From positions 62,001-126,000 of the IMG/VR virus record IMGVR_UViG_3300026521_000471: DNA of 64,000 nucleotides; one strand, 5' to 3'. Positions 5,746 to 38,579 of the stretch are shown here, piece by piece; the first letter of the stretch is position 1; each line of letters opens with the position of its first letter. The notes below the pieces were generated by a model. That model searched no databases. It saw only the letters and a list, made by a program, of their open reading frames with translations, and had not been told where the DNA came from. Position numbers and translations under genes: made by a program.

Positions 5746-5779
5746 TAAAATGTTAAAAGGTAGTTTTTAATTTAACAAT

Positions 5780-5851
5780 TAACTTGTAGCTATAATGGTA
5801 GAGCGGAGTGTGAAGTTCCTCGCGATATTGGTTCGATTCCAATCAAGTTAA
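5780..5851 (+). pseudogene. Degenerate tRNA-like cloverleaf (anticodon ambiguous, GUG or UGA)
   Basis: Acceptor TAACTTG/CAAGTTA, D arm GCTA..GGTA-GAGC, T arm ATTGG-TTCGATT-CCAAT; irregular anticodon arm, no CCA. Confidence 0.5.
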
Positions 5852-6210
5852 TGGATGATCTCAGGCTATTAATTTATTTTAATAGGAATCGCAAAGAATC
5901 ATCAAATAATTGTTAAATTTAATCTATATATAATAGACAGTAGTTGCAGGAATTGAATTCTCCTAAGACGACTCAATGTGCTAATAATGAAAGGTTAGCA
6001 GTCGCTATATTCTCTGTAAGTGAGATAAGTATGGAAATAAGTTGGTAAAACCAAATGACACCATAAACATTTAAGAAATGTAGTTTGATAATTAGTATGA
6101 AATAACAACCTACGGTTATCAGAGGGTCATCCGACAGATAATTAAGTTTATCTGACCCGTACCTTGGAATAGGTCTAGCGATATTATATATATTTTATAA
6201 ACTATCTTTA

Positions 6211-6375
6211 AATAATTTTACCGAAGCCTCTCGTTAGGTTGGGGTTCGATTCCCTACGAAAAAGTAGCTCTTTTTCATAACTTGGAGGAACCTAAGTGAT
6301 GCCCGAAGTTGAGGTTCGATTCCTCTGTAAGGGTAGCTCCCTTTGTAATACATGGTGGGCTTCGGTAAAATTATT
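6211..6375 (+). ncRNA. Structured RNA: 18-bp terminal stem enclosing two T-loop + GUAGCUC-hairpin units
   Basis: Perfect IR 6211-6228/6358-6375; two units GG-TTCGATT-CC ... stem-GTAGCTC-stem with compensatory stems. Confidence 0.6.
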
Positions 6376-6419
6376 ACAAACAAAAATAAATAAGTATATC
6401 TTATGATCGAGGTGTACTT

Positions 6420-6557
6420 ATGAAACTAGTAATAATTTTTTTACTCCTTTTGCTTTTTACAGGATGTAAAGAACCTACAAAAGAGGAAAAAGCTAAAAAA
6501 CAAGAACAAGCTAAGTTATTATTAATTCTAGATTCAATAGAAAATCAAAAAAATTAA
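6420..6557 (+). CDS. Small lipoprotein (45 aa)
   Basis: Not in ORF track; GAGG RBS; MKLVIIFLLLLLFTG-C lipobox. Confidence 0.65.
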   Translation: MKLVIIFLLLLLFTGCKEPTKEEKAKKQEQAKLLLILDSIENQKN

Positions 6558-6671
6558 TATAATTTTAAGGTTACTTTTTGTATAATATCAATATAAGTTT
6601 TAGTTTCAACTATTTTAAATAGTAGTTAGAAGATTTAGGTTTAAGAAATTAGACCTTCTACTAAGACTTAT

Positions 6672-6818
6672 AAATTAACTTTTTAGTGTTACCAAATAAA
6701 AAAGATATAGCAGCTTAACTGCCTCTACTTTATAAATGTTAGAACACTCCTTTATTTTTTAGAACTCCTTTGTTGGGTTATTTGAGTTACTAATTTGGTA
6801 GCACTAAAAAGTTAATTT
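6672..6818 (+). ncRNA. Long hairpin RNA with two anti-Shine-Dalgarno CUCCUU motifs in the enclosed region
   Basis: 26-bp IR 6672-6697/6793-6818 with one G.U; CTCCTT at 6747 and 6765. Confidence 0.5.
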
Positions 6819-6865
6819 TAAAAAATTAAGTTTATTTTAAGAACTTTTTTTGTATAATTACTTTA

Positions 6866-7790
6866 TCGAAACTGATACCACTAAGAAATCTTTGGATTTT
6901 TTAATGGTGCTAGTCACCCATAGTATGATATGGATAACGGGGATAGTATCCCCCGAAGACGGATTTGACAATTCCGTGCTACTTAATTGTAGTCAATTCA
7001 TACAAGCTGACACTTAGGTAGGTTTGTTGCCTATCGGATACTGAAATGTGTCCTATTAGTGAAGTATTGGAATCTGCAGACTAACAATCTGCGTATGTGA
7101 GAGCCATTCGGTGTAGCATACAGAAGCTAGGGATAGTGAAAGGTTCATCCAACAATACGAATTAAGAATAGTGAACAGTAGAATAGGTGTTTGAGTGTAA
7201 AAACAAAGGCTGCTATTCAATACAATAGTATGAGTCCATAAGGCTTACTGCTAGAAGTATGGTGGAAATCGAAAGATGGAAGCAAAGGGTGTGTTGTATT
7301 CTGAAGGTCATACTTTGGAGCAACTGAGCAGACACACCCTTGTCATTATCGTATAGCTCAGGGTAGAGCGTTTTCATTTTAAGGAAAAGGTCGAAGAGTC
7401 GAATCTTCTACGGAAATATTAAAACGGAAAGTTCTGCTCCCTATGTAAAAGGTCGAAAGACCCGACGAAAATAGCCTAATCGCTGACAGTTTAACTGAAT
7501 TGGCGACAATTAGTACCTCCCAAGGGGAAAGTTGTTTGATAGGATGCAGCATTTATTGGGGTAGCTCCTCATTAACGGCCTGTAAGAAGGACGGAAGAAT
7601 GTTGATAATCGAGTAGTCACATAGTAGAGAGGAAATGCTACCTCTGTAAAAAACAAAGCGGCTATGGGAATCAACTATAATGTACTGGGGACAGTAGTTA
7701 TAGTGGATAAGGAGAGAACCTTTTATGGGGACATAATTGGATAATGCTCTGAATGGATTTCTACTAAAAGGTGTAATCTCAACCTTTTAA
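6866..7790 (+). ncRNA. GOLLD-like giant ornate RNA
   Basis: About 900 nt ORF-free, GC-enriched, hairpin-dense region after promoter 6837-6858; GTGTG..TGTATTCT..AGCAACTGAG..ACAC, CGAGTAGT and 3' GTAATCTCA hairpin resemble GOLLD as I recall it; next to tRNAs, with an embedded tRNA. Ends approximate. Confidence 0.7.
7347..7416 (+). tRNA. Degenerate tRNA-Lys(UUU)-like element embedded in the GOLLD-like RNA
   Basis: TAGCTCAGGGTAGAGC D arm, TTTTC-ATTTTAA-GGAAA anticodon arm, aberrant T loop (GTCGAAT), no CCA. Confidence 0.55.
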
Positions 7791-7937
7791 AATAAAATTT
7801 TAATGAGAAAGAATTATAGATAAAGATTACATCGTAATTTTTGAAACAATTGACAGGAACCCGTTCGATTCGTGGTTTTGGAAGCTGGTGCCACTTTAAG
7901 TCTTTATTGCTTCTATCTTTCTCATTAAAATTTTATT
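7791..7937 (+). ncRNA. Structured RNA closed by a perfect 22-bp stem, apical GTTCGATTC T-loop
   Basis: IR 7791-7812/7916-7937. Confidence 0.5.
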
Positions 7938-8057
7938 TAAATATAGTTTAATACAATTTTTATTAATTGAAAATATCTATTCAATTAAGTTTGAGGTGAA
8001 ATAGAAGATTGAGTGAAAGTCTCATATTTAAATAAAATTTAAATTTTTAAGTGTAAA

Positions 8058-8097
8058 TTAAGAAAAATTATTGTATAATTACAGTAATTAAAAAGAA
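8058..8097 (+). promoter_or_regulatory. Promoter of tRNA array 1
   Basis: TTAAG-N11-TATAAT; 8068-8097 is identical over 30 nt to 18591-18620. Confidence 0.7.
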
Positions 8098-8151
8098 AAA
8101 AATAAAAAGTGATATAAATAAAATCACAAAATAAAAATAAGGAGAACGGTT

Positions 8152-8241
8152 ATGAAAATAGTATCAATATTTAACAATTATTTAAACATATTTTATTCGG
8201 CACTAATATCGTACTCTTCTTATTTTAGAGTCTTTCACTAA
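8152..8241 (+). CDS. Leader peptide A (29 aa, MKIVSIFNNYLNIFYSALISYSSYFRVFH)
   Basis: AAGGAG RBS; Ser x5, Tyr x4, Phe x4, Ile x4 (all ATA), one TTA, matching the downstream tRNAs. Confidence 0.8.
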   Translation: MKIVSIFNNYLNIFYSALISYSSYFRVFH

Positions 8242-8330
8242 GAGATAAATTCATTTTTATCCCTTAGTGAAGAACTTAGGGATAAATTGAAAATCTTTCA
8301 AAAATCCCCTATTTTCTTTACAAATTACTT
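8236..8330 (+). promoter_or_regulatory. Attenuator-like switch A
   Basis: Box 1 CACTAAGAGATAAA (8236-8249) and arm 3 (8275-8286) both pair with arm 2 TTTATCCCTTAGTG (8256-8269); C-rich, G-poor tract follows. Confidence 0.7.
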
Positions 8331-8331
8331 T

Positions 8332-8422
8332 GGAGAGTTGGCAGAGTTGGTCGATTGCACCGGTCTTGAAAACCGGCGACGTGTAACAGCGTCCGAGAGT
8401 TCGAATCTCTCACTCTCCACCA
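8332..8422 (+). tRNA. tRNA-Ser(UGA)
   Basis: Type II cloverleaf, CCGGT-CTTGAAA-ACCGG, encoded CCA. Confidence 0.95.
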
Positions 8423-8426
8423 TTTT

Positions 8427-8511
8427 GGAAGCGTAGTCAAGTGGTCAACGACGGCAGACTGTAAATCTGCTCCCTATGGGTTCGGTGGTTCAAATCCACC
8501 CGCTTCCACCA
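8427..8511 (+). tRNA. tRNA-Tyr(GUA)
   Basis: GCAGA-CTGTAAA-TCTGC, V arm, CCA. Confidence 0.95.
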
Positions 8512-8570
8512 TAGAAAAAAATAAAAAATTAAGTTAATCTAAAGGATTAATTTGGTATAATAACTTTATA

Positions 8571-8743
8571 AATTGATTGAAATATGAAAACTTGAAAACG
8601 GATTAAACTGTGGTGGTTTATGATGTGGCGAAGTTGTAAACAAAAGAGCCCGGACCATTAGTAAAAGACTAACCATCTTTGAAAGTGGTACGGAAGCTGT
8701 TTGGATGAAGACGGGTACTAAAGTTTTCATTTTTCAGTCAATT
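8571..8743 (+). ncRNA. Structured RNA domain closed by a ~23-bp stem, abutting the permuted tRNA
   Basis: IR 8571-8593/8721-8743 with G.U on the + strand; GC-enriched multibranch interior. Confidence 0.5.
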
Positions 8744-8776
8744 GATTGAGAATTAAACTAAGAAAATACATCGAAG

Positions 8777-8869
8777 TAAAACCGCTGACATATTGTCTTG
8801 TTGGTTCGAGTCCAACCTTCCCCACCAGTTTATATGGGTGAAGTGGTGAAATTGGTAAACACGGCGGAT
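8777..8869 (+). tRNA. Circularly permuted tRNA, best reconstructed as Leu(UAA): 3' half 8777-8827, spacer, 5' half 8836-8869
   Basis: 3' half has V arm, T arm and CTTCCCC-A-CCA; the downstream 5' half GGG(T)GAAG-TG-GTG-AAATTGGTAAA-CAC-GGCGGAT complements both acceptor and anticodon stems; flanks 8744-8772 and 8867-8901 pair. Confidence 0.65.
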
Positions 8870-8920
8870 GATAAAATATTTCTTAGGATTCAATCTCAAT
8901 CAGGTCTGAAATAAAAAAGC

Positions 8921-8997
8921 GGACAATTAACTCAGTTGGTTAGAGTCACCGCCTCATAAGCGGGAGGTCGCTGGTTCGAGTCCAGCATTGTCCACCA
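8921..8997 (+). tRNA. tRNA(CAU), probably Ile2 (lysidine type, reads AUA)
   Basis: CTCATAA loop, GTCGCTGGTTCGAGTCCAGCA Ile2-like T arm, CCA; leader A uses ATA four times. Confidence 0.85.
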
Positions 8998-9673
8998 TCA
9001 ATACAAAAGTATCATTCAAAATCATTTTAATTTCACGCTCCTTTAAAACTATTAAATTATTAACAACGTCCCATTTTGCTTTATCTCTTTCTCGTTCATA
9101 TCCTTTAACTTCAATAAATATATTTAAATCGGGAATATAAAAATCTGGAAAATATAAGTGTTTTCTTCCTTTCCATTCATATTCAAATGGTTCTGTATCT
9201 CTAATATAGTTAATATCATGTTCCACTAAATATTTTGCTACTATCACTTCCCATGTTCCATGAAATTTATCTCCATTAAATTCAATTATTTTTACTCTAC
9301 CACAAACGTTATTAGCAGAATAACTATCTGGATTATTACGAACCATATCTCTCATTCGTTCTGATTGTTCAATTTTATACTTAGTACTTTTCATATATGC
9401 TTGAAAATTATCTGACATAAAGCCTTGAGGTTCCCAACCATTAATTTCCATATTATGATGTTTGGTCCAATAATGATTTCTAAATTGACCAATAGTTTTA
9501 AAATGTTTATCGCATTTATTACAAATATACTGATTATTATCTATATTAAGAAATTTATCTGACAACATATCTCTTTGATTTTTTTCACAAGCTTTTGTAC
9601 CTATATGACTTTTTAATTTAGTTAAAGAACTAAACTCTTTTCCACAATCAGAACATATTTTTGAGTCATTCAT
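8954..9673 (-). mobile_element. Free-standing homing endonuclease-like gene (C2H2 zinc fingers + PD-(D/E)XK domain)
   Basis: CSDC..H, CNKC..H..H fingers; YFPDFYIPDLNIFIEVKG nuclease motif; antisense insertion in the tRNA cluster. Confidence 0.7.
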
Positions 9674-9702
9674 TAGTCTTCCCTTTTTTGTATAATTTAA
9701 TT

Positions 9703-9768
9703 AGAAGGACAGCAACTCATACTTCCCGAGTTGTTTCTTAATTGGTGCAAACAATTAAGATTACTTCT
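9703..9768 (+). ncRNA. Conserved three-way-junction RNA antisense to an endonuclease 5' UTR (copy 1)
   Basis: AGAAG-GACAG-[stem]-TT-TCTTAA[stem]TTAAGA-TTA-CTTCT, repeated with covariation at 28593-28655; TGTATAAT just upstream. Confidence 0.6.
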
Positions 9769-10265
9769 TTATTACTCTTATTTATACTTATTTTTAATCA
9801 ATTTTAGAAACTTTCTAATATTTTCAAAGGAATTTAAGTTTATTTTAATATATATTATTGTATAATATTATAAATAAAAAGGTTATTAAAAATTATATTA
9901 GCCCACCATTAAAATAATTGATTGCTTAAAGATTTCTTTGAAATTTTTCAGCAGTTAATAGAAATATTAACTTTAGCAAATGAGCCCAAGTATCACCCGA
10001 AGCTATTAAGTAGGGATTGCCTCTCCATTGGAAGATGGCTTGGGAGCCGATTTAAACCGAAGTACAACTCTGTACAAGGACAGTTTTAAAACTGGTGGTT
10101 ATGTGCTTTATTCCTAAAAGCAATGAGTAAAAATTAAGCGTGAAAAATAAAACTCAAAAATAAGGACAGAAAGATGAATTTTACATTTAGTAAGTCCTAC
10201 TATAAATCAGTCTAATTCAATAGGGTTTGTAGTAGGACGTTAATATAATAACAGAAAACTACAAA

Positions 10266-10341
10266 CCCGTTGAAGCTAACTAAGTAGAAGCGCTGGTCTG
10301 AAAAACCAGAGGAGTTGGAGCGTTACCAACCAGCGGGACCA
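10266..10341 (+). tRNA. Non-canonical tRNA-Phe(GAA)
   Basis: Full cloverleaf and CCA, CTGGT-CTGAAAA-ACCAG; no GG in the D loop, T loop AGCGTTA. Confidence 0.75.
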
Positions 10342-10352
10342 TTTTAATTAAT

Positions 10353-10430
10353 GGGACCGTCGAATATCCGGTGACTGTTCGTTGGACTGAAAATCCAAAG
10401 GTAGAGGTTCGACTCCTCTCGGTCCCACCA
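10353..10430 (+). tRNA. tRNA-Phe(GAA)
   Basis: TTGGA-CTGAAAA-TCCAA, T loop TTCGACT, CCA. Confidence 0.9.
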
Positions 10431-11527: not shown

Positions 11528-11828
11528 AAAATAATTTTTAAAATTATAAATAATGTATAATAATAATTATAATTTATAATATGAATGGATCTTTTTGAAA
11601 TTGTTTTTCCTATAATTTAATATAACCAAGACGAATAACTGTTTTATATTTTAAGTTATATTTAAAATTTATTTTGTATAATTCTTATTATAGTTTTATT
11701 TGAAACATTTCTAGTGTTTCGATCGACTAAATAGTAAGTCACCCATTTTTAATGGGAAATTATGAGTGCAATTCTCTATCGGAACAAAAAAAATAAAATA
11801 TGTTGAGAAATCAACAAGGAGATTTGTT

Positions 11829-12593
11829 ATGAACAAAACTAAATTAATAATTGTGGGTTTAGTTACAGCTTTAATACTAAGTGGTTGTGGTGATTCAACG
11901 AAGAGCAATATAGATGAAAATTATGTGGTGAAGGTCTCAAGAGGACCAGTTTATGGTGCCGAAGTTAAGGATAGTGCAGACCCTGCTAATATAGCAGTTG
12001 AGATTGAAGGAACTAACACATATCGATTTGCTGTCTCAGAAGACGAAATTGTGCTACCAGTTACTGCTAATGGTGGATTTATTGACGTAAATAACGATGG
12101 AAAAATCGAAGCCGGTGTAGATATGAAATTAAATATGGAGTTGCGTTCTTATACTGAAAACTTAACACCAATTACGACTTATTTGGCAACTGAAGCAAAT
12201 AATACAATAAGAGATGCGAAATTAGATAGTCTTACAAAGTTAGTAAATAATTCAATAGATGACATAAACGTTTCTGATACTGATTTACTTAAAGCAACAG
12301 AAGATGCTTCAACAGAGGCACAATTAGTTATCAATGCGGTTTACAGTAAAATAATTGAAGCTCAAAATTCAAACAGTTCTTTGGAGTTAGATACTGATTC
12401 AGCACAAGCAGACCTAATAGGGAAACTTACGGATTTATCAAATCGTTTGAATACATTCGATGATAATTTAACAGACGCAGAAATTGCTGTAGAACTTGAA
12501 AAGCAAACTATGACTGAGTTAGACATCGATCCTATTTTAGAGGCCGACTTAAATCTAACAACAGAACTTAACATTACAGATATTAGTAGTTAA
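11829..12593 (+). CDS. Host-like lipoprotein
   Basis: Start moved to MNKTKLIIVGLVTALILSG-C lipobox; EF-hand-like DVNNDG. Confidence 0.7.
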   Translation: MNKTKLIIVGLVTALILSGCGDSTKSNIDENYVVKVSRGPVYGAEVKDSADPANIAVEIEGTNTYRFAVSEDEIVLPVTANGGFIDVNNDGKIEAGVDMKLNMELRSYTENLTPITTYLATEANNTIRDAKLDSLTKLVNNSIDDINVSDTDLLKATEDASTEAQLVINAVYSKIIEAQNSNSSLELDTDSAQADLIGKLTDLSNRLNTFDDNLTDAEIAVELEKQTMTELDIDPILEADLNLTTELNITDISS

Positions 12594-12645: not shown

Positions 12646-12685
12646 GGAAGTGTAACCGAGAGTTCGAATCTCTCCACTTCCACCA
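12646..12685 (+). ncRNA. 40-nt tRNA minihelix (acceptor stem + T arm + ACCA)
   Basis: GGAAGTG-TAACC-GAGAG-TTCGAAT-CTCTC-CACTTCC-A-CCA; all 12 bp perfect. Confidence 0.7.
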
Positions 12686-13025
12686 TTCTAATTTTTTATC
12701 AAATCAATTAATTTCTAAAATTATAAATAATGTATAATAATATTTAAAAGGGTTTTCGTGTACAAAAGCGATATGATAACTCTTACTAAATATGCTATGG
12801 AATTGGTTTAGTTGGGCTAAGGATAAAGGAAGGTTATAATGGAATACCATTATTATCAAATCTAATTGTAATAGCTCCTACGCAGATTTATTACAAAAAT
12901 TTGCTGAGAAGATATCACGAAAACAAACAACTATATTAAAATTGAAGATTGATTTGTTTAAAGTATCAGCCATCTTTGGTGAAGATACCCGTTGATAATT
13001 CTATACACCACATTAAGGAAAATAT

Positions 13026-15212
13026 ATGAAATGGAATATTAATAAAAAATTAAAAGCCATGACAATCATTCCGAGTATAATAATGATATTTGGATTTGGT
13101 TATCTGGTTTATACCGATTATAATGAATATCGAGATTTAGTTGTTTTAGAAAAAACAGTTAAAATCGATACACATATTAATCATTTAGTGCATTTCTTGC
13201 AACAAGAAAGAGGAGCTAGTGCTGGATACGTAGCATCCAATGGTAAAAAATTTAAAAATCAACTATCTGAAATTCGTAAAAAAACTGATACAAAATTCAC
13301 TATCTTAGAGAAAGCATTAAAAGGTAACAGAAATCATTTTACATTAGAAATGTCTAGAAAAATAGATGAGGCACTTCAAATGTATAACGAACTTTCCGTT
13401 ATGCGAAGTAGTATTGATAATTTAACAATAACCGTTCCAGAAACTGTTAAATACTTTAGTTCCATGAATGCAACCTTTTTAGATTTTATTAAACTAAGTA
13501 AAGATTTATCTAATGATAATGAATTTTCAAAACAACTTTCAGTAATTACAGCTATTAGTGCTACAAAAGAATTAGCAGGTAAAGAAAGAGCTGTTATGAC
13601 AAGTGTTTTTGCTAAAGATAAATTTATAGATGGTTTCTATGCACAATTTAAAACTTTAGTAGCATTACAGAAAAGTTATATGGAAAGTTTTAGATTACTT
13701 GCAACTCCAACAGCAATTAAAATTCTTAATGAAATATCTTCTACTTCTCCTTTTTTAGACGTTGAAGAAATGCGAAAGATTGCAATGGAACGAAATAAAG
13801 ATGGGGCTTTTGGTGTTGACTCGGTAAGATGGTTTGATACTATGACTAAAAAAATAAATGGTATGGAACAAATCGAACATAAATTAGAAAATATTCTTCT
13901 AGATGAAATTGATAGTCAAATGAAATATTTATTGTCGATGGTTATTACAATGTTTATCCTTGCAGTCTTAATTACATCTAGTTTAACTTATGCAGGGTAT
14001 AAATTTAATAAATTTTTAATCGATAGAGTGAACAAGATGAATATTATTTTAGAAGATTCTATTAATACTCATAGCTATGATGAACAATTATTAATTTCTA
14101 ATGATGATGAATTATCAAAGATAGAAAATGCAATTAATAAAATGTTTGTGAGTTTAACTGAAGCTGCAGAGGCTAGAAGAATTTCGGATATTGAAATAAA
14201 GAAAAAAGCTGAAGAAACTGCAAAACTATTAGCAAGAAATAATATGAATCTTAAACTGAATAAACTAATGAGTACGCATACAACCGATAACCTAAATGAT
14301 ATTAAAGATGGGCTGAGTGATGGGACTGAAGAATTAGAAAAAATTAATGAAATTAATGATAAAGCCCAAGATAATTTTAATTCTGTTATTGCGGCTAAAA
14401 ATACTATGGTTACTACTTTAGAAACCGTTTCTGAAGGAATGAATTCTACAACAGAAAGAGCGGAACAATTAGAAGAATCTGTTAATGAAATTGCAAGCAT
14501 TATTGGTTTAATCAAAGATATTTCTGAACAAACAAACTTACTTGCACTTAATGCAGCTATTGAAGCAGCAAGAGCGGGTGAGCATGGACGAGGTTTTGCC
14601 GTGGTTGCTGATGAAGTTCGTAAACTAGCTGAGAGAACAGCTGTTGCAACTAAGAATGTAGAAGCGAGTATTAATATCGTTAAACAAAATACTTCTGAAA
14701 TGAATGAAAGTACTGAACAAATGACAGAAAGTATTAAAGATGCTCAAGAGGTATCTCATACTCTAGATGTAGAATTAGACACCTTAATATCTATCAATAG
14801 AAATAATACTGTTAGAAATAATATGATTAGTGAAGATATTCTTGTTACCCTTACTAAATTAGAACATGTTATTTTTAAAATAATGGGTTATAATAGCGTT
14901 TTAGAAGAATGTACAAAATGTGAACCTGTCACTCATGAAGCTTGTAGATTTGGACAATGGTATAAAACTGAGGGAAAAAATAGATATAGTAAAAATTCAT
15001 CTTTTAGAAGTATCGAAATACCGCATAAAGAAGTCCACGAAAATGTTAGAAAAGCCGTTGAATTAATAGGCAAAAAAGATGATGATACTATTATTCGATA
15101 CTTTGAGATCGTAGAAGTAAATTCTAAAAAATTATTTGATCTTTTGACAAGAATAGTTAAAGAAGAAAATGATAAAATGGTTCTGGAGATTAATGATGGA
15201 AAAAATAAATAA
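13026..15212 (+). CDS. Methyl-accepting chemotaxis protein with NIT sensor and C-terminal CZB domain
   Basis: [17 protein letters not shown] (NIT)-TM-HAMP; [35 protein letters not shown] signalling tip; [16 protein letters not shown]. Confidence 0.9.
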
Positions 15213-15387
15213 ACCACAGTTAGAAGATTTTAACTTATTAATTCAAAGCGAAGAGGGAATCAATGCCCTTTTCGATTATGTTCGACATTTAGATAAACAA
15301 CACGCTCAAGATAAAAGAGAGATAAAATATTTAAACGATTATATTGAAAAGCTAGAAGCTACAATTAGTAAATTAAGAAAAAGATAA
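15193..15387 (+). CDS. Small coiled-coil protein
   Basis: ORF track 15169; GGAG RBS favours ATG 15193. Confidence 0.55.
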
Positions 15388-15431: not shown

Positions 15432-15824
15432 ATGAAAGTACAAAATATTATACCAATATACCAACAACCAAAAATAGAAGATATGGTTGGACAACAAAAA
15501 CAGGAATACCCAAAACCTAGTGTTCCGCCTGAATTACCAAATGAAAACCCAGTAGAATCTCAAGATAAAAAAGAAGATTCTACTAATACAACTCCATCTT
15601 TAACAGATGGACAAACTTTAGCAGTAAAAGCTAATTCAGTTCAAGGTAAAATAGATGCTTATGCTGCTGGAACAGGAATAGATAGAAATGATAATACGCC
15701 TGATTTATCTAATAATCAATTCCAACGAACAATAGACGATCTTAATCAATATAGAGAAATTCAAGATAAAGTTCAGAAACAAAATGGTATCAAAGAATAT
15801 CAATCTATTTTGGGAATGAATTGA
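15432..15824 (+). CDS. Hypothetical late protein
   Basis: TATAAATA 15405, AAGGAG RBS. Confidence 0.7.
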   Translation: MKVQNIIPIYQQPKIEDMVGQQKQEYPKPSVPPELPNENPVESQDKKEDSTNTTPSLTDGQTLAVKANSVQGKIDAYAAGTGIDRNDNTPDLSNNQFQRTIDDLNQYREIQDKVQKQNGIKEYQSILGMN

Positions 15825-17135: not shown

Positions 17136-17882
17136 ATGTCATATGATTGGTCTAAATACTCTGCATCATCCGATTCTAAAACTCTTAATAGTACAAATCA
17201 ACCAACACTTAAAGAACTTCGAGAAGCATTAATACGACCTTTAGGCGAAAGTATTAATGAAGCAATTGAAGAACATGTATCTACTGCAATGGCAAAAATC
17301 ATTACAGGTAATAATAACGCTGACTCAGCTTTAAGTAACTCTTTGAATAATCAATTAAAAGTTAATGAATCATCATTAGAAAATATATTAAAAAATAATG
17401 AAATATCATTAGAAGCACGAATTAAAAAAACCACAGAAATTATTACTGGTATATTAGTAGGAATATATGATGAAGATATAATAGAAGATACCTTAAAATC
17501 TATCGATATTAATAACTTAACATCAATTAATGATAATTGGGATGGTTTAGAAAAGGGTGCGTCATTTATGAAAAATGACATAAAAAGAAATTCTAATTTT
17601 ACCATGGATAATGGGACGGAACATAATCCAGTAGATCCATTGATTGAATTAACAAGAGCCGTAAAAAGTCTAGTTGTGCAACATACTTGGATGTCAGTAA
17701 AATCTGATAAACAGGCTAGCAATATGGGTGTTGCTGTAGATGGTGTTGTTTCTGAAGCCTTTTACAATGATGCAAAAGCCGCAAATAGAAAAGTAGCAGA
17801 AGATACAGTTCATCAGATTTTAAATTTAGATGGTACACATGATGATGACGGAATTTATCCAAATAATCAGGGATTTGAATAA
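17136..17882 (+). CDS. Hypothetical protein
   Basis: ORF track; AAGGA RBS; coupled to the PAAR gene. Confidence 0.75.
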   Translation: MSYDWSKYSASSDSKTLNSTNQPTLKELREALIRPLGESINEAIEEHVSTAMAKIITGNNNADSALSNSLNNQLKVNESSLENILKNNEISLEARIKKTTEIITGILVGIYDEDIIEDTLKSIDINNLTSINDNWDGLEKGASFMKNDIKRNSNFTMDNGTEHNPVDPLIELTRAVKSLVVQHTWMSVKSDKQASNMGVAVDGVVSEAFYNDAKAANRKVAEDTVHQILNLDGTHDDDGIYPNNQGFE

Positions 17883-18178
17883 TGGGTACTTTAGCGGGTA
17901 GAGTCCCAGATTTAAATACAGGTCACCCACCTTGTTTTACACCTACCGTAGCTATTACAGGTTCTCCAACAGTATTTGCAAATTCATTACCAGCTCATAG
18001 AATGGTTGATTTACATATCCCACATCCTTGTCCTGGAATACCACCACATCCAGTATTTCAAGCGATAGGATGTTCGAGAGTATATGTAAATTCATTAATG
18101 TGGGCTGGAGTTGGACATCCTCAATTATGTCTATCTTTATTATTAACCGGTTCACCGACAGTATTTGTATGTATTTAA
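17882..18178 (+). CDS. PAAR-repeat tail-spike tip protein (T4 gp5.4-like)
   Basis: GH..C.PT..ITGSPTVFANSLPAHRM.D...PH.C and terminal TGSPTVF repeat. Confidence 0.85.
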   Translation: MGTLAGRVPDLNTGHPPCFTPTVAITGSPTVFANSLPAHRMVDLHIPHPCPGIPPHPVFQAIGCSRVYVNSLMWAGVGHPQLCLSLLLTGSPTVFVCI

Positions 18179-19225: not shown

Positions 19226-19302
19226 GTATCCGTAACTCAACTGGATAGAGTATTCGGCTTTTAACCGAAAGGTTGTGAGTTCAAGTCTCACCGGATACAC
19301 CA
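19226..19302 (+). tRNA. tRNA-Lys(UUU) copy 1
   Basis: TTCGG-CTTTTAA-CCGAA, CCA; D loop carries A20. Confidence 0.9.
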
Positions 19303-19304
19303 TT

Positions 19305-19380
19305 GGGTGTATAGCTCAGTTGGTAGAGCACATCACTTTTAATGATGGGGTCTAGGGTTCAAATCCCTATGCACCCACCA
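19305..19380 (+). tRNA. tRNA-Lys(UUU) copy 2
   Basis: CATCA-CTTTTAA-TGATG, CCA. Confidence 0.93.
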
Positions 19381-19464
19381 ATGTAGCATTTTACTAAGAA
19401 GATTAGATTCTTTTTATTAAAGTGTTATTGTTAGGACGCTAACATAACTCTTAGGAGTATTTTT

Positions 19465-19539
19465 ATAGTAGTAATAACCTTTGTCGGTTTCTCCTTACTA
19501 AGGAAATGAGTTCGAGTCTCATTAAAGGCTTACTACTAT
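19465..19539 (+). ncRNA. D-armless tRNA-like element in a long closing stem
   Basis: ATAGTAGTAA/TTACTACTAT stem, CCTTT/AAAGG, anticodon-like hairpin and T arm TGAG-TTCGAGT-CTCA. Confidence 0.45.
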
Positions 19540-19599
19540 ATCAAAAAGTAATAGCGTGGAGTAATTAACCACAAAATTATATACTCCGATTTTAAATAT

Positions 19600-19675
19600 T
19601 GCGGAGTGGAGCAGTTGGTAGCTCGCTGGGCTCATAACCCGGAGGTCATTGGTTCAAGTCCAATCTCCGCCACCA
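19600..19675 (+). tRNA. Initiator tRNA-fMet(CAU)
   Basis: 1:72 mismatch (U.C), three G-C pairs closing the anticodon loop, CCA. Confidence 0.93.
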
Positions 19676-19719
19676 AATTTTAAAAATTAGATTTTTTTAA
19701 CAATGTGTATAAATAGATT

Positions 19720-20008
19720 ATATATACATTTTTAAGAGAATTAAAGATGGAAATTACATCGAATTATTGGAAATTAGGAAACAACTTTCCATTGATTTTA
19801 TCTCTTACAACCGAGAAAAAGCCATAAATTGAGTGGTGTTGTAAAACTAAGAGTTGTCTAAGTTACCTGAAAGAATGGTTATTAAATAGATGCACCCAGT
19901 AAGAAAGTGCCGGGCATCAACTAAACTTAATATTATTAATTTAATATGAATGACAAACGGGCGGAGTATGGTATAAACAGGGCAGCTCAAAATTTATAAA
20001 TGTATATG
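19720..20008 (+). ncRNA. Unidentified structured RNA between fMet and Ala tRNAs
   Basis: Late promoter 19708; terminal stem 19722-19731/19998-20007; several internal hairpins; no convincing ORF. Confidence 0.4.
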
Positions 20009-20013
20009 AAAAT

Positions 20014-20089
20014 GGGGCATTAGCTCATCTGGGAGAGCGCTACCCTTGCAAGGTAGAGGCGAACGGTTCGAGTCCGTTATGCTCCACCA
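20014..20089 (+). tRNA. tRNA-Ala(UGC)
   Basis: G3.U70, CTTGCAA loop, CCA. Confidence 0.95.
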
Positions 20090-20171
20090 TTTTTAAAAAT
20101 TTATTAAAGCTTTTAATAAAAGTTTTAACAAGTTTTTACTTGAAAATAAAAATTAAATTAAGGAAATTAGT

Positions 20172-20330
20172 ATGAGAACAATTAATACAATTACAACTAC
20201 TGTAAATACACTTATTAATAACACTATTGATACTCATGCAAATGATATTATTAATATTCATACTAATGAACAAATTCTGGATATTCAGCCGAATATTCAA
20301 GAAGATGAGCAGGAACCAATCTTTCTGTAA
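20172..20330 (+). CDS. Leader peptide C (52 aa, MRTINTITTTVNTLINNTIDTHANDIINIHTNEQILDIQPNIQEDEQEPIFL)
   Basis: AAGGA RBS; 47 of 51 non-Met codons are Ile/Thr/Asn/Asp/Gln/Glu/Leu(CTN)/His/Pro, the downstream tRNA set; no Lys, ATA or TTA. Confidence 0.85.
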   Translation: MRTINTITTTVNTLINNTIDTHANDIINIHTNEQILDIQPNIQEDEQEPIFL

Positions 20331-20430
20331 GAGATAACTTAAACTTTATCCCTTACAGAGAGATTTGTAGGGGATAAAAGAAACAAACTTTCCACTTTCT
20401 TTTCTCAATCCTTTACAAACTCTCTAAATT
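20324..20430 (+). promoter_or_regulatory. Attenuator-like switch C
   Basis: Box 1 (20324-20337) and arm 3 (20364-20377) both complement arm 2 (20345-20359); long G-free C/T-rich tract follows. Confidence 0.75.
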
Positions 20431-20435
20431 ATTAT

Positions 20436-20519
20436 TGTGATATGCGCCGAATGGTAAGGTAGCCGACTGTTAATCGGTCGAGAGAAATCTCATTGCTGGT
20501 TCGAATCCAGCTATCACAG
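20436..20519 (+). tRNA. tRNA-Asn(GUU) with an unusual long variable arm
   Basis: GCCGA-CTGTTAA-TCGGT, V hairpin GAGA-GAAA-TCTC, G73; followed by CC then the next tRNA. Confidence 0.85.
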
Positions 20520-20521
20520 CC

Positions 20522-20598
20522 CGTCCCTTAGCTCAGTTGGTTAGAGCGTTCCGCTGATAACGGAGAGGTCGGAAGTTCAAATCTTCCAGGGACGACCA
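20522..20598 (+). tRNA. tRNA-Ile(GAU)
   Basis: TTCCG-CTGATAA-CGGAG, CCA. Confidence 0.95.
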
Positions 20599-20612
20599 TA
20601 AAAATTAAATAC

Positions 20613-20689
20613 GGTCTGTTAGTTCAGTTGGTTAGAACGCAACCCTGTCAAGGTTGAGGTCACCGGTTCGAGTCCGGTACAGATCGCCA
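20613..20689 (+). tRNA. tRNA-Asp(GUC) copy 1
   Basis: CAACC-CTGTCAA-GGTTG, G73, CCA. Confidence 0.95.
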
Positions 20690-20693
20690 TTAC

Positions 20694-20767
20694 TGAGGTA
20701 TCGTCTAGTGGTAGGACATCTGGTTTTGGTCCAGAGAGCGGGGGTTCGAACCCCTCTACCTCGTCCA
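20694..20767 (+). tRNA. tRNA-Gln(UUG) copy 1
   Basis: TCTGG-TTTTGGT-CCAGA, CCA. Confidence 0.93.
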
Positions 20768-20780
20768 TTGTGTATTTTGC

Positions 20781-20851
20781 TGGGCTATCGTCTAGTGGCA
20801 GGACTCCGTCTTTTGGCGGCGGTAACATAGGTTCGAATCCTATTAGCCCAT
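20781..20851 (+). tRNA. tRNA-Gln(UUG) copy 2
   Basis: CCGTC-TTTTGGC-GGCGG; no encoded CCA. Confidence 0.9.
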
Positions 20852-20895
20852 CAAAGTACATTGTACTTTTATCAATGAAGATATAAAAATAAAAC

Positions 20896-20970
20896 GGCTC
20901 CATGGAGAAGTGGTTATCTCATCGCTCTTTCACAGCGAAATCTCGGGTTCAAATCCCGATGGAGTCACCA
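20896..20970 (+). tRNA. tRNA-Glu(UUC) copy 1
   Basis: TCGCT-CTTTCAC-AGCGA, CCA. Confidence 0.95.
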
Positions 20971-20979
20971 AATTTAATT

Positions 20980-21062
20980 GCCGAAATGGTGGAATTGGTA
21001 GACACGCTAGACTTAGGATCTAGTGCTTTTGCGTGAGAGTTCGAGTCTCTCTTTCGGCACCA
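20980..21062 (+). tRNA. tRNA-Leu(UAG)
   Basis: CTAGA-CTTAGGA-TCTAG, V arm, CCA. Confidence 0.95.
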
Positions 21063-21132
21063 TTATATCAATTTATTGATGAAGCCTTAATTTAAATATT
21101 AAAGTTTCACAAATAAATTGTTACGAGCTTTA

Positions 21133-21232
21133 GAATCGCACATAGGATACGCGGCCTATGTAGCAGAAGTACCCACTTTAAGGAGGGAGATAGATTTCAA
21201 GGGATTGAAATTGAATATCCAGAATGCGATTC
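21133..21232 (+). ncRNA. Unidentified multibranch RNA inside tRNA array 2
   Basis: Closing stem GAATCGCA/TGCGATTC with three internal hairpins. Confidence 0.45.
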
Positions 21233-21242
21233 ATTAAAAAAT

Positions 21243-21319
21243 GTCGATGTATATCAACTGGTTAGATTGCCACCCTGTCAAGGTGGAGGTTGTGGGTTCG
21301 AGTCCCATCATTGACGCCA
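21243..21319 (+). tRNA. tRNA-Asp(GUC) copy 2
   Basis: CCACC-CTGTCAA-GGTGG, G73, CCA. Confidence 0.92.
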
Positions 21320-21322
21320 AAT

Positions 21323-21397
21323 GCTTCGTTCGACTATCGGCTAGGTCATTAGGTTTTCATCCTAAAAAGAGGGGTTCGATTCCCCTACGAAGTACCA
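21323..21397 (+). tRNA. tRNA-Glu(UUC) copy 2
   Basis: TTAGG-TTTTCAT-CCTAA, CCA. Confidence 0.92.
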
Positions 21398-21410
21398 TTT
21401 TTTATTATAA

Positions 21411-21488
21411 CGGGGTGTGGGAAAGTTTGGTTAATCCGCTACTTTTGGGAAGTAGAAATCCTCAGTTCGAGTCTGAGCACCCCGACCA
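21411..21488 (+). tRNA. tRNA-Pro(UGG)
   Basis: C1-G72, TTTGGGA loop, CCA. Confidence 0.93.
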
Positions 21489-21501
21489 TTTACATATCAA
21501 T

Positions 21502-21577
21502 GCCGATTTAGCTCAGTTGGTAGAGCAACTCACTTGTAATGAGTAGGCCTGGAGTTCAAATCTTCAAATCGGCACCA
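21502..21577 (+). tRNA. tRNA-Thr(UGU)
   Basis: ACTCA-CTTGTAA-TGAGT, CCA. Confidence 0.95.
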
Positions 21578-21595
21578 CTTCTAATTGTTAAATAT

Positions 21596-21673
21596 GGTAG
21601 TAGTAGCTCAGTTGGTTAGAGCGACGGTTTGTGGCACCGTAGGTCGTGGGTTCGAATCCCATCTATTACCCCA
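21596..21673 (+). tRNA. tRNA-His(GUG)
   Basis: G-1:C73, ACGGT-TTGTGGC-ACCGT, CCA. Confidence 0.95.
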
Positions 21674-21675
21674 TT

Positions 21676-21762
21676 GTCGATATGGTGAAATTGGTAAACA
21701 CACTACCTTGAGGGGGTAGCGCCTATTAAGGTTTGAGAGTTCGAATCTCTCTATCGACACCA
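21676..21762 (+). tRNA. tRNA-Leu(GAG)
   Basis: CTACC-TTGAGGG-GGTAG, V arm, CCA. Confidence 0.95.
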
Positions 21763-22076: not shown

Positions 22077-22146
22077 TATATTAAAATCATTTATAAATAA
22101 TATTGATTTGTTTTACAAATTACTATTTTATAAATGGAGAAAATTT

Positions 22147-22596
22147 ATGTATAATTTTGGAAAAAGAAGTAGAAGCAGACTTGACACTTGTCACCCAGAC
22201 TTAATTAAGATTATGGAAGAAGCTATTAAAGTTTTTGACTTTTCTGTTTTGGAAGGCATTAGAACTACTGAAAAACAACAAGAATATTTTGAAACAGGTA
22301 GAAGTAAATTAGATGGCATTCATAAACTATCTAAACATCAAGACCATGGAGATGGTTTATCTCATGCAATCGATATTATGCCTTATAAAAAAGGGACAAA
22401 TGCTTTTAGTGGAAAAGAGAAAGATAAAGCAAGGTTTTATTTCTTGGCAGGATTGATTAAAGGTATTACTTATAGACTTTTAGAAGAAGGAAAAATTTCA
22501 CATACTATTAGATGGGGTGGAGATTGGGATTCCGATGATATCTTTAATGATCAAAATTTTGATGATTTACCTCACTTTGAGTTAAAAGCTATTTAA
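22147..22596 (+). CDS. Endolysin, M15 L-Ala-D-Glu peptidase family
   Basis: EGIRT..Q, SKH, HAIDI, WGGDW, DLPHFEL; start moved to ATG 22147. Confidence 0.88.
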   Translation: MYNFGKRSRSRLDTCHPDLIKIMEEAIKVFDFSVLEGIRTTEKQQEYFETGRSKLDGIHKLSKHQDHGDGLSHAIDIMPYKKGTNAFSGKEKDKARFYFLAGLIKGITYRLLEEGKISHTIRWGGDWDSDDIFNDQNFDDLPHFELKAI

Positions 22597-37421: not shown

Positions 37422-37785
37422 TAAAATTAAATCATTTATAAAAGGATTAGAATTAACTAAATTCGATAAAATCTTCTTTATAGGATATATTAGTTTATGG
37501 ATATATTATTTATTTAGTGGAATGAGTTATTTAACTGCTGGCGGTATATTATTAATTCTTGGAGCATGGCTAGTTTTTAAAGGTGAAATTTTTGTTGCAA
37601 CTTTAAACTATGTTATAGCCGATATAATGTGGGTTTTAAATGCTATTAATATAGGTGATAATGAAGGTACTATTTTCATTATAATTGGTATGCTTTTAGG
37701 TATTGCAGCAACTTATAAAATGCAAATTGGATCTTTAGCAAAATCATTAAAAATAGAAAAAAATTGTAAAATAAAACTAAAATAA
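37408..37785 (+). CDS. Membrane protein
   Basis: Multiple hydrophobic segments; start moved to ATG 37408. Confidence 0.6.
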   Translation: MHFFNKIKSFIKGLELTKFDKIFFIGYISLWIYYLFSGMSYLTAGGILLILGAWLVFKGEIFVATLNYVIADIMWVLNAINIGDNEGTIFIIIGMLLGIAATYKMQIGSLAKSLKIEKNCKIKLK

Positions 37786-37797
37786 AAAAGGATTAAT

Positions 37798-38562: not shown

Positions 38563-38579
38563 ATTTAAGAGGAAAATAT

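What the first reader, a model, noticed from the sequence alone, without database searches (positions are those of the whole stretch)
13026..15212. Phage-encoded chemoreceptor with nitrate-sensing NIT and zinc-binding CZB domains
An intact 728-aa MCP with a canonical CheA/CheW-binding tip sits between the tRNA arrays. Established: NIT binds nitrate/nitrite; CZB senses zinc/HOCl, as in Helicobacter TlpD; many Campylobacterota respire nitrate. Chemoreceptors are rare in lytic phages. Inference: the phage steers infected cells toward electron acceptor or toward new hosts.
Basis: partly seen in the sequence, partly recalled or inferred. Interest (0 to 1): 0.62.

Follow-up and report, generated by a model that had tools for sequence, protein, structure and literature searches.

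The report
Phage-carried nitrate-type chemoreceptor gene
A large phage of sulfur-oxidising Sulfurimonas-like bacteria carries an intact, long-conserved copy of a host-type swimming-direction sensor (NIT sensor, signalling hairpin, zinc domain), which suggests that the virus re-tunes where its infected host swims; this has not been shown.

Summary
Window 13026-15212 (+) is an intact 728-aa transmembrane chemoreceptor: periplasmic NIT domain, two membrane helices, MCP signalling hairpin with an invariant kinase-binding tip, and a C-terminal CZB domain with all four zinc ligands.

It is not a host chimera. The 224-kb record is a virus record with phage genes on both sides. The gene's GC equals its flanks. 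Orthologues lie on five other phage contigs, four of which share further genes with this phage. All six form one clade (100/100) sister to Sulfurimonas receptors that are only 34-37% identical. Sensor, tip and CZB are under purifying selection (dN/dS about 0.05-0.25).

The phage record holds no CheW or CheY gene. The receptor must therefore use the host's chemotaxis machinery.

- The ligand: one NIT chemoreceptor is known not to bind nitrate.
- The "lytic" lifestyle.
- The steering hypothesis.

Full-length chemoreceptors with other sensors also occur on other large viral contigs. I rate this a new member of a rare, uncharacterised kind. It is moderately interesting and directly testable.

The parts
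13026..15212 (+). Phage chemoreceptor gene, 728 aa (P0001): TM1, NIT, TM2, HAMP-like linker, MCP signalling hairpin, CZB
13015..13019 (+). AAGGA ribosome-binding site, 6 nt before the ATG
   Evidence: read from the sequence
13185..13889 (+). Periplasmic NIT sensor domain (residues 54-288). Both signature arginines (R62, R188) are invariant and align to the two conserved arginines of NasR
13914..14000 (+). Second transmembrane helix (about residues 297-325). The first is at about residues 9-30, nt 13050-13115
14001..14165 (+). HAMP-like linker (residues 326-380). No Pfam HAMP hit; the model's confidence is low at 380-398
14436..14828 (+). MCP signalling domain (residues 471-601), including the hairpin tip 495-540 (nt 14508-14645) that is invariant with the bacterial kin
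14865..15059 (+). Cytoplasmic CZB zinc-binding domain (residues 614-678) with ligands H614, C640, H667, H671
15193..15387 (+). Small coiled-coil ORF (63-64 aa) that overlaps the MCP stop by about 20 nt, with GGAG before it. It is conserved directly after the MCP in two other phage contigs (L003, L178) and absent from the bacterial loci. Function unknown
   Evidence: no family
15432..15824 (+). 130-aa ORF, 38% identical to the gene in the same position in L003. Function unknown
12770..13010 (+). Decayed remnant (frameshifts and stops) of the 89-90-aa gene that directly precedes the MCP in L001 and L003
   Evidence: read from the sequence

Best explanation
This is a genuine phage gene. It was captured long ago from a Sulfurimonas-like (Campylobacterota) host and has since been inherited within a group of large phages. 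It encodes a working transmembrane chemoreceptor. During infection it would be inserted into the host inner membrane and join the host's polar receptor arrays through its invariant tip. There it would control host CheA/CheW, because the phage record holds no Che genes of its own. It would thus add two inputs free of host regulation: a periplasmic NIT signal (most likely nitrate or nitrite) and a cytoplasmic CZB signal (zinc or redox state). The likely effect is that the infected cell keeps or strengthens its swimming bias toward the electron-acceptor zone. That zone sustains energy for a long large-phage infection and also holds the densest population of new hosts. Shown: the gene, its domains, its phage location, its single origin and purifying selection. 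Inferred: membrane insertion, array coupling, the ligand and the behavioural effect.
For: Phage location: G000 is an IMG/VR virus record of 224 kb, estimated 85% complete. It holds RIIA, topoisomerase II, a DnaB-like helicase, T4-type RNA ligase, HNH endonucleases, an endolysin and many PHROG families. The gene's GC (0.287) equals that of its flanks (0.283). Independent contigs: L001 is collinear with the window at 81-98% aa identity. L003, L177 and L178 share other genes with G000. L002/L018 has a Gp23 capsid gene 2 kb away. Single origin: the six phage copies form a clade at 100/100, sister (100/99) to the Sulfurimonas-type clade. The best bacterial identity is 37% in 151 genomes of that family. 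Selection: dN/dS for window against L001 is 0.16 (NIT), 0.11 (TM2 plus HAMP-like linker), 0.10 (N-arm) and 0.05 (tip). Against L003 it is 0.16 (NIT) and 0.25 (CZB). The NIT signature residues and CZB ligands are invariant. There are no indels relative to the bacterial sister clade through the signalling hairpin, so array packing should be compatible. The tip matches the E. coli core-unit receptor at rmsd 1.5 A. No CheW or response regulator was found in the phage record. Sulfurimonas genomes hold 6-10 CheW-domain genes and about 25 MCP-like matches each. Sulfurimonas is reported to swim toward nitrate (PMC8359478, citing Grote 2012). Some NIT chemoreceptors respond to nitrate (PMC10832524).
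Against: Ligand: the NIT domain of PA4520 does not bind nitrate (PMC6381276). There is no Pfam HAMP hit, and the model is uncertain at residues 380-398. No virion structural gene was detected in the record with four Pfam families, so phage identity rests on other genes and on the IMG/VR call. dS is near saturation for all pairs but the closest, so those ratios are rough. The host is inferred from the gene's own phylogeny only. A receptor that is one of about 25 in the host may change behaviour little.
Confidence: 0.5

Rival explanations
1. Array jamming or motility lock. The phage receptor joins host arrays mainly to fix kinase output, stopping or locking swimming. This could block superinfection by flagellum-dependent phages or keep the cell in place. 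Sensing would be irrelevant.
For: The tip is the most conserved part (dN/dS 0.03-0.05). No adaptation enzymes or Che genes are found in the phage record. P0007 has a degraded CZB that falls below the Pfam hit.
Against: The periplasmic NIT domain is also under purifying selection (0.16). Its signature residues are invariant in all six phage copies, and the CZB ligands are kept in the four full-length copies other than P0007. A pure jammer would not need either sensor.
Confidence: 0.15
2. A sensor for the phage's own decisions. The receptor, perhaps with the conserved phage-specific small ORFs downstream, reports nitrate or redox conditions to the phage (for example lysis timing) rather than to the flagellar motor.
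For: A 50-64-aa coiled-coil ORF follows the MCP in three divergent phage contigs. In the window and L178 it overlaps the MCP's end, and in L003 it starts 3 nt after the MCP stop. It is absent from the bacterial loci. A second ORF is conserved in two of the contigs.
Against: The tip is identical to the host-type CheA/CheW-binding tip. The small ORFs have no recognisable family. The complex prediction gave no answer, which counts neither way.
Confidence: 0.1
3. A neutral passenger: a host gene picked up by chance, with no role in infection.
For: It sits in a variable region full of tRNAs and small inserts. The neighbouring 89-aa gene has decayed here.
Against: The frame is intact in five of six phage contigs despite divergence to 43-46% identity and saturated synonymous sites. 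dN/dS is well below 1. Its divergence tracks that of the other shared phage genes.
Confidence: 0.05
4. Assembly chimera or host contamination: the gene belongs to a bacterium and was joined to phage DNA by the assembler.
For: A related contig (L001) does switch to unrelated, bacterial-looking sequence (an alternative MCP C-terminus, then a KsgA-like gene). The switch falls right after the conserved tip, about 730 bp from its contig end. This shows that such joins can occur at this gene.
Against: In the window the gene lies 75 kb and 147 kb from the contig ends, with phage genes on both sides. A second contig carries the identical protein with the same neighbours. L003 holds the complete gene with CZB inside phage DNA. 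GC matches the flanks. No bacterial copy exceeds 37% identity.
Confidence: 0.02

Closest known systems
NIT-MCP-CZB chemoreceptors of Sulfurimonas and related Campylobacterota (P0008-P0014; loci L004, L005, L179, L180)
   Same: They have the same architecture and length (715-724 aa), an invariant tip, the same NIT motifs and CZB ligands, and no indels through the signalling hairpin.
   Different: They are only 34-39% identical. The phage copies form their own clade, sit in phage DNA, and are followed by phage-specific small ORFs.
Helicobacter pylori TlpD and E. coli DgcZ (CZB domain; PDB 3T9O)
   Same: They share the CZB fold and the 3His/1Cys zinc site. In DgcZ and TlpD, CZB reports zinc and HOCl oxidation (PMC8262984).
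   Different: TlpD is soluble and has no periplasmic sensor, and DgcZ is a diguanylate cyclase. Here CZB is the C-terminal add-on of a transmembrane receptor. The relevant signal in a sulfur oxidiser is unknown.
NasR NIT domain (PDB 4AKK) and the NIT chemoreceptors Dd15070, PacN and PA4520
   Same: The NIT domain aligns over its full length (E 2.4e-18; Foldseek E 6.6e-10) with both signature arginines.
   Different: NasR is a cytoplasmic antiterminator. Among NIT chemoreceptors some respond to nitrate (PMC10832524) and PA4520 does not bind it (PMC6381276), so the ligand cannot be read from the domain name.
Host-derived auxiliary genes of phages (for example cyanophage psbA, from general knowledge) and other viral MCP genes
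   Same: It is a host-type gene kept under selection in phage genomes and presumably sustains a host function during infection. MCP genes are listed in phages of ammonia oxidisers (bioRxiv 10.64898/2026.05.02.722434) and in viruses of sulfate reducers (PMC9448743). They also occur on large IMG/VR contigs L035 (4HB sensor) and L028 (Cache sensor).
   Different: None of those MCPs has NIT plus CZB. None has been shown to form a conserved phage clade, and none has been tested. Here the function is behavioural, not metabolic.

Membership tests
Methyl-accepting chemotaxis protein (PF00015) | Signalling domain above Pfam's gathering score | tested here: met
   115 bits against a cut-off of 34.6; 122 bits in the genome search
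Methyl-accepting chemotaxis protein (PF00015) | Conserved hairpin tip that binds CheA/CheW | tested here: met
   Residues 495-538 are invariant with the bacterial kin. The tip matches 6S1K_E at TM 0.89 and rmsd 1.5 A
Methyl-accepting chemotaxis protein (PF00015) | Two membrane helices flanking a periplasmic sensor | tested here: met
   Hydropathy peaks at residues 9-30 and 297-325; long helices in the model. This is a prediction only
Methyl-accepting chemotaxis protein (PF00015) | HAMP domain between the membrane and the signalling hairpin | tested here: inconclusive
   No Pfam HAMP hit. Residues 326-380 look HAMP-like by eye and are conserved in the kin. pLDDT is below 50 at 380-398
Methyl-accepting chemotaxis protein (PF00015) | Physical coupling to CheA/CheW and control of swimming | not testable with these tools
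   Host-type genomes hold CheW, CheV and CheA genes; the phage record holds none
Methyl-accepting chemotaxis protein (PF00015) | Methylation sites and adaptation | not tested
   No C-terminal pentapeptide; CZB takes that place. Methylation sites were not mapped
NIT domain (PF08376) | Domain hit and fold | tested here: met
   179.6 bits against a cut-off of 24.9; NasR 4AKK E 2.4e-18; Foldseek TM 0.68
NIT domain (PF08376) | Binds nitrate or nitrite | not testable with these tools
   R62 and R188 align to the two conserved NasR arginines. Their role in nitrate binding is from my recollection of the NasR structure paper. PA4520 is a counter-example (PMC6381276)
CZB domain (PF13682) | Domain hit with the 3His/1Cys zinc motif | tested here: met
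   49.3 bits against a cut-off of 29.4, full profile; H614, C640, H667, H671; 3T9O_B prob 1.0, TM 0.74
CZB domain (PF13682) | Binds zinc and responds to oxidants | not testable with these tools
   Needs metal analysis and cysteine mutants
Phage genome (the gene's carrier) | Phage replication, lysis and other hallmark genes on both sides | tested here: met
   RIIA, topoisomerase II, DnaB-like helicase, Rnl-type ligase, HNH, endolysin and PHROG families; virus record at 85%
Phage genome (the gene's carrier) | Virion structural genes in the same record | tested here: not met
   No hit for Gp23, Terminase_6N, Phage_sheath_1 or GPW_gp25. The record is incomplete, and the Gp23 search rang in none of its control genomes, so that blank says nothing either way. 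The related contig L002 has Gp23 next to its MCP
Auxiliary (host-derived) phage gene | Kept under purifying selection within phages | tested here: met
   dN/dS 0.05-0.25 by domain; monophyly at 100/100

The most novel reading that the evidence does not exclude
The receptor is part of a phage-owned sensory module: the MCP plus the small ORFs that follow it. Through this module the virus would read nitrate or redox conditions and either steer the infected cell or time its own development. That would make behavioural control of the host a heritable, conserved trait of a lineage of large phages.
Probability: 0.12. Interest if true: 0.85.

Novelty: new member of a known kind. Interest (0 to 1): 0.55.

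Why it matters
Phage auxiliary genes are known mostly for metabolism. A complete chemoreceptor kept under selection across a whole group of large phages would mean that viruses also tune where their hosts swim. Sulfurimonas lives at nitrate-sulfide interfaces and drives sulfide detoxification and denitrification. A virus-borne nitrate-type sensor could therefore shift where infected cells respire and lyse. The case is directly testable, because the sensor domain can be purified and the receptor expressed in a model Campylobacterota host. It also extends the CZB domain to viruses; a 2021 survey found it essentially only in bacteria (PMC8262984).

Tried and rejected
- **Complex prediction.** I folded the MCP cytoplasmic part (residues 326-728, two copies) with the 63-aa downstream ORF. 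The verdict was no answer (score 0.00). This is no evidence for or against binding. The first attempt found the machine busy.
- **Sequencing runs.** There was therefore no read-level check of the junctions and no expression data.
- **Viral contig scans with single proteins.** The single MCP found nothing. The alignment found the L018 copy and about 160 MCP-domain contigs. A search for relatives through the topoisomerase II subunit found nothing.
- **tblastn against 50,697 GenBank phage records.** It returned only three weak signalling-domain hits, in records that look bacterial or prophage-like.
- **Virion genes.** Pfam searches of the record for Gp23, Terminase_6N, sheath and gp25 were all blank.
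- **Sample origin.** A paper search for the JGI sample numbers found nothing, so the environment is unknown.
- **CZB against solved structures by sequence.** Nothing significant. The fold search did find it.
- **Big representative protein search.** Not used, because the word search had already answered the question.
- **Other checks.** No alternative genetic code was needed.
- **A second MCP in L003.** I considered that the 616-aa ORF upstream of the MCP in L003 might be a second MCP. It has no match to the window's genome, so I dropped the idea.

Full report
**1. The observation**

The ORF at window 13026..15212 (+) is real. It is 728 codons long, starts with ATG and has no internal stop. An AAGGA ribosome-binding site lies six bases upstream.

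Pfam finds three domains well above their curated cut-offs:
- NIT, residues 54-288, 179.6 bits
- MCPsignal, residues 471-601, 115 bits
- CZB, residues 614-678, 49.3 bits, covering the whole profile

NCBIfam adds matches to the Campylobacter CcaA receptor and, over the CZB part, to the diguanylate cyclase DgcZ family.

Two hydrophobic segments lie at about residues 9-30 and 297-325. They place NIT in the periplasm and the signalling hairpin plus CZB in the cytoplasm.

An AlphaFold2 model built on 16 homologues has mean pLDDT 82. Foldseek matches it to four kinds of solved structure:
- NasR (4AKK, E 6.6e-10)
- chemoreceptor core units (8C5V, 2CH7)
- the E. coli receptor tip (6S1K_E, TM 0.89, rmsd 1.5 A)
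- the CZB domain of DgcZ (3T9O_B, TM 0.74)

tRNA genes flank the region at 5779-10430 and 19226-21762.

**2. Is it really phage DNA?**

The window is bases 62001-126000 of a single 224,467-base virus record (JGI 3300026521). IMG/VR classes the record as linear, and CheckV puts it at 85% complete. GC is 0.28 throughout, and nearly all genes are on one strand.

The record holds the following phage genes:
- RIIA, a topoisomerase II subunit and a DnaB-like helicase
- a T4-type RNA ligase and HNH endonucleases
- an endolysin and a PAAR protein
- seven paralogues of phrog_10773
- GroEL and an aspartyl-tRNA synthetase

RIIA finds about 2,900 phage records, but none above 34% identity. This phage therefore has no close cultured relative.

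One caveat remains. Four Pfam families for virion proteins (Gp23, Terminase_6N, sheath, gp25) gave no hit in the record. Either the structural module lies in the missing part or it is too divergent. The Gp23 search also rang in none of its control genomes, so that blank says nothing.

The receptor gene lies 75 kb and 147 kb from the record's two ends. Its GC (0.287) equals that of its flanks (0.283). A second contig in the collection carries the identical protein with the same neighbours.

**3. Relatives**

The word search found a graded series of full-length relatives. Their genomic contexts separate cleanly into phage and bacterial.

| Protein | Identity to P0001 | Locus | Context |
|---|---|---|---|
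| P0003 | 82% | L001 | 72-kb contig collinear with the window; neighbouring genes 81-98% identical |
| P0004 | 62% | L003 | Phage contig; a dozen other genes match this phage at 35-62% |
| P0006 | 43% | L177 | Short contig sharing an RNA-ligase-like gene (33%) with this phage |
| P0007 | 43% | L178 | Short contig sharing an endolysin (82%) and a 587-aa protein (35%) with this phage |
| P0005 | 46% | L002 and IMG/VR contig L018 | 332-kb contig, 2 kb from a Gp23 major capsid gene; shares no other gene with this phage in the 20 kb seen |
| P0008, P0013 | 36-39% | L005, L004 | Ordinary bacterial gene neighbourhoods |
| P0011 | 37% | not fetched | Named Sulfurimonas by its source |

**4. Phylogeny**

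I built a careful maximum-likelihood tree of 47 NIT-containing receptors.
- The six phage copies form one clade (bootstrap/SH-aLRT 100/100).
- That clade is sister (100/99) to the Sulfurimonas-type bacterial clade (100/97).
- Both lie inside a NIT-MCP-CZB clade (100/100).

For this tree I trimmed P0003 to its first 538 residues, because its C-terminus is unrelated (see section 9).

Named genome contigs give Sulfurimonas, Sulfuricurvum, Thiovulum and other Campylobacterota as the best bacterial matches. Two Sulfurimonas genomes each hold full-length orthologues at 35-36% identity, among 24-27 MCP-like matches. In 151 genomes sampled from that family, 13 have such an orthologue, and none exceeds 37% identity.

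The simplest reading is one old capture from a Sulfurimonas-like host, followed by inheritance within phages. The receptor's divergence between phages tracks that of their other shared genes. The root of the tree is not inferred, so the direction of transfer is an inference. It rests on the wide bacterial distribution of the architecture.

**5. Selection**

Nei-Gojobori estimates on the codon alignment:

| Comparison | NIT | TM2 + HAMP-like linker | N-arm | Tip | C-arm | CZB |
|---|---|---|---|---|---|---|
| Window vs L001 (dS 0.55-1.1 outside the tip; 2.05 in the tip) | 0.16 | 0.11 | 0.10 | 0.05 | not comparable | not comparable |
| Window vs L003 | 0.16 | not quoted | not quoted | 0.03 | 0.21 | 0.25 |

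Synonymous sites are near saturation in the L003 pair and beyond, so those ratios are rough.

In the 16-sequence alignment the following are invariant or nearly so:
- the NIT signature residues (H56, Q59, E61, R62 ... K181, E182, E187, R188)
- the whole tip
- the CZB ligands H614, C640, H667 and H671

R62 and R188 align to the two conserved arginines of NasR.

There are no indels between the phage clade and its bacterial sister through the signalling hairpin. The C-arm from the turn to the CZB start is about 95 residues. That fits the short 28-heptad class I recall as typical of Campylobacterota receptors. I did not assign the class formally.

**6. How it most likely works**

The phage record has no CheW and no response regulator. 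The receptor can therefore only signal through host proteins. Sulfurimonas genomes hold 6-10 CheW-domain genes, of CheW, CheV and CheA sizes.

I infer the following steps:
1. The protein is made during infection and inserts in the inner membrane.
2. It joins the host arrays through its host-identical tip.
3. It feeds two inputs into CheA: a periplasmic NIT signal and a cytoplasmic CZB signal.

Nitrate or nitrite is the most likely NIT ligand. Some NIT chemoreceptors respond to nitrate (PMC10832524), and Sulfurimonas is reported to swim toward nitrate (PMC8359478, citing Grote 2012). The ligand is not safe to assume, however. [quoted passage not shown]

In DgcZ, CZB reports zinc occupancy and cysteine oxidation (PMC8262984). 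What it reports in a sulfur oxidiser is unknown.

By analogy only: in P. aeruginosa, nitrate lowers transcription of the nitrate receptor mcpN, and taxis appears only under nitrate limitation (PMC6381276). A phage copy would escape such host control and host shut-off.

The benefit could be sustained energy supply for a long infection, delivery of the lysing cell into dense host populations, or both. None of this has been shown.

**7. Rivals**

- **Array jammer.** This fits the extreme conservation of the tip. It does not explain the selection on both sensor domains.
- **Sensor for the phage's own decisions.** This is suggested by a phage-specific small coiled-coil ORF (window 15193-15387). It follows the receptor in three divergent phage contigs: it overlaps the receptor's end in the window and L178, and starts 3 nt after the receptor's stop in L003. 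It is absent from the bacterial loci. A further 130-aa ORF is shared with L003. Neither has a recognisable family. A complex prediction gave no answer.
- **Neutral passenger.** This is unlikely, given intact frames at 43-46% identity.

**8. Comparison with what is known, and novelty**

As a protein, this is a member of the bacterial NIT-MCP-CZB receptor family, in a separate phage clade.

As a phenomenon, phage-carried MCP genes have been listed in passing. They appear in phages of ammonia oxidisers (bioRxiv 10.64898/2026.05.02.722434) and as auxiliary genes of viruses of sulfate reducers (PMC9448743). I found none that has been tested.

In IMG/VR at least 160 contigs hold an MCP signalling domain. 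Of ten top hits I checked, five lie within 1.5 kb of a contig end and may be host flanks. Two large contigs do carry full-length receptors among phage-like genes:
- L035 (161 kb) has a four-helix-bundle sensor and lies near an HNH endonuclease.
- L028 (89 kb) has a Cache sensor and lies near thymidylate synthase and a helicase.

Chemoreceptors in large phages are therefore rare but recurrent.

Three points are new here:
- the NIT plus CZB combination on a virus
- evidence for a conserved, monophyletic phage clade under purifying selection
- the linked phage-specific small ORFs

I rate it a new member of a known but uncharacterised kind, with moderate interest.

**9. Seen in passing**

- In L001 the receptor switches, right after the tip (nt about 1620 of the gene), to an unrelated MCP C-terminus without CZB. 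A KsgA-like gene follows at the contig end. This looks like an assembly join, or a recombination, with a bacterial receptor at the conserved tip.
- In the window, the 89-aa gene that precedes the receptor in L001 and L003 has decayed.
- A lipoprotein-like ORF (11829-12593) absent from L001 is inserted upstream. It is bounded by a tRNA-like element and a 40-base match to the 3' end of tmRNA.
- A GOLLD-like RNA lies at 7284-7785.

Noticed in passing
window 7284-7785 (+): Match to the GOLLD large RNA family (RF02032). It scores 110.7 bits, below the gathering score of 150, but with E 8e-29 over the full model. A tRNA-like element is embedded at 7347-7416.
   Followed up: no
window 12646-12685 (+): A 40-base match to the 3' end of tmRNA (RF00023, E 3e-8), ending in a T-arm, acceptor stem and CCA. 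It lies just upstream of the receptor module and may be a remnant of an integration or recombination site.
   Followed up: partly
window 10266-10338 and 11716-11786 (+): Two further tRNA-like matches that ARAGORN did not call (44.7 and 34.7 bits). The second overlaps the start of the 11766 ORF.
   Followed up: no
window 11829-12593 (+): ORF with a lipoprotein-type signal peptide (254 aa from the inner ATG). It is absent from the otherwise collinear contig L001, which implies an insertion of about 1.2 kb between the cytidylyltransferase/cupin gene and the receptor module.
   Followed up: partly
window 12770-13010 (+): Decayed copy, with frameshifts and stops, of the 89-90-aa gene that is intact directly upstream of the receptor in L001 (9732-10001) and L003 (1976-2248).
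   Followed up: partly
L001 11620-12346: After the conserved tip, the receptor of this related phage contig continues as an unrelated MCP C-terminus without CZB. A KsgA-like rRNA methyltransferase gene follows at the contig end. This is probably an assembly join or recombination with a bacterial receptor.
   Followed up: partly
window 32364-34214 (+) and 59726-61351 (+): A full-length aspartyl-tRNA synthetase (tRNA-synt_2, GAD and anticodon-binding domains) and a GroEL chaperonin are encoded by the phage, besides at least 22 tRNAs.
   Followed up: no
window 35868-41519, 50040-51350; G000 126668-129322: Six paralogues of phrog_10773 (function unknown), with weak tblastn matches in Pseudomonas, Vibrio and Synechococcus phages; the gene at one of the Vibrio phage matches is annotated as queuine tRNA-transglycosylase-like.
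   Followed up: no
window 22108-22596 (+): Endolysin-like ORF, 82% identical to the L178 gene that matches phrog_465.
   Followed up: partly
window 8954-9673 (-): One of the few minus-strand ORFs. It has a C2H2 zinc-finger motif at its N-terminus and sits inside the first tRNA cluster.
   Followed up: no
window 17882-18178 (+): PAAR-motif protein (26.9 bits, just under the cut-off of 27), possibly a tail-spike tip, 2.7 kb downstream of the receptor.
   Followed up: no
L035 8861-10606; L028 8804-10744: Other large IMG/VR contigs (161 kb and 89 kb) carry full-length chemoreceptors with different sensors (4HB_MCP; Cache_3-Cache_2) among phage-like genes (HNH endonuclease, thymidylate synthase, helicase).
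   Followed up: partly
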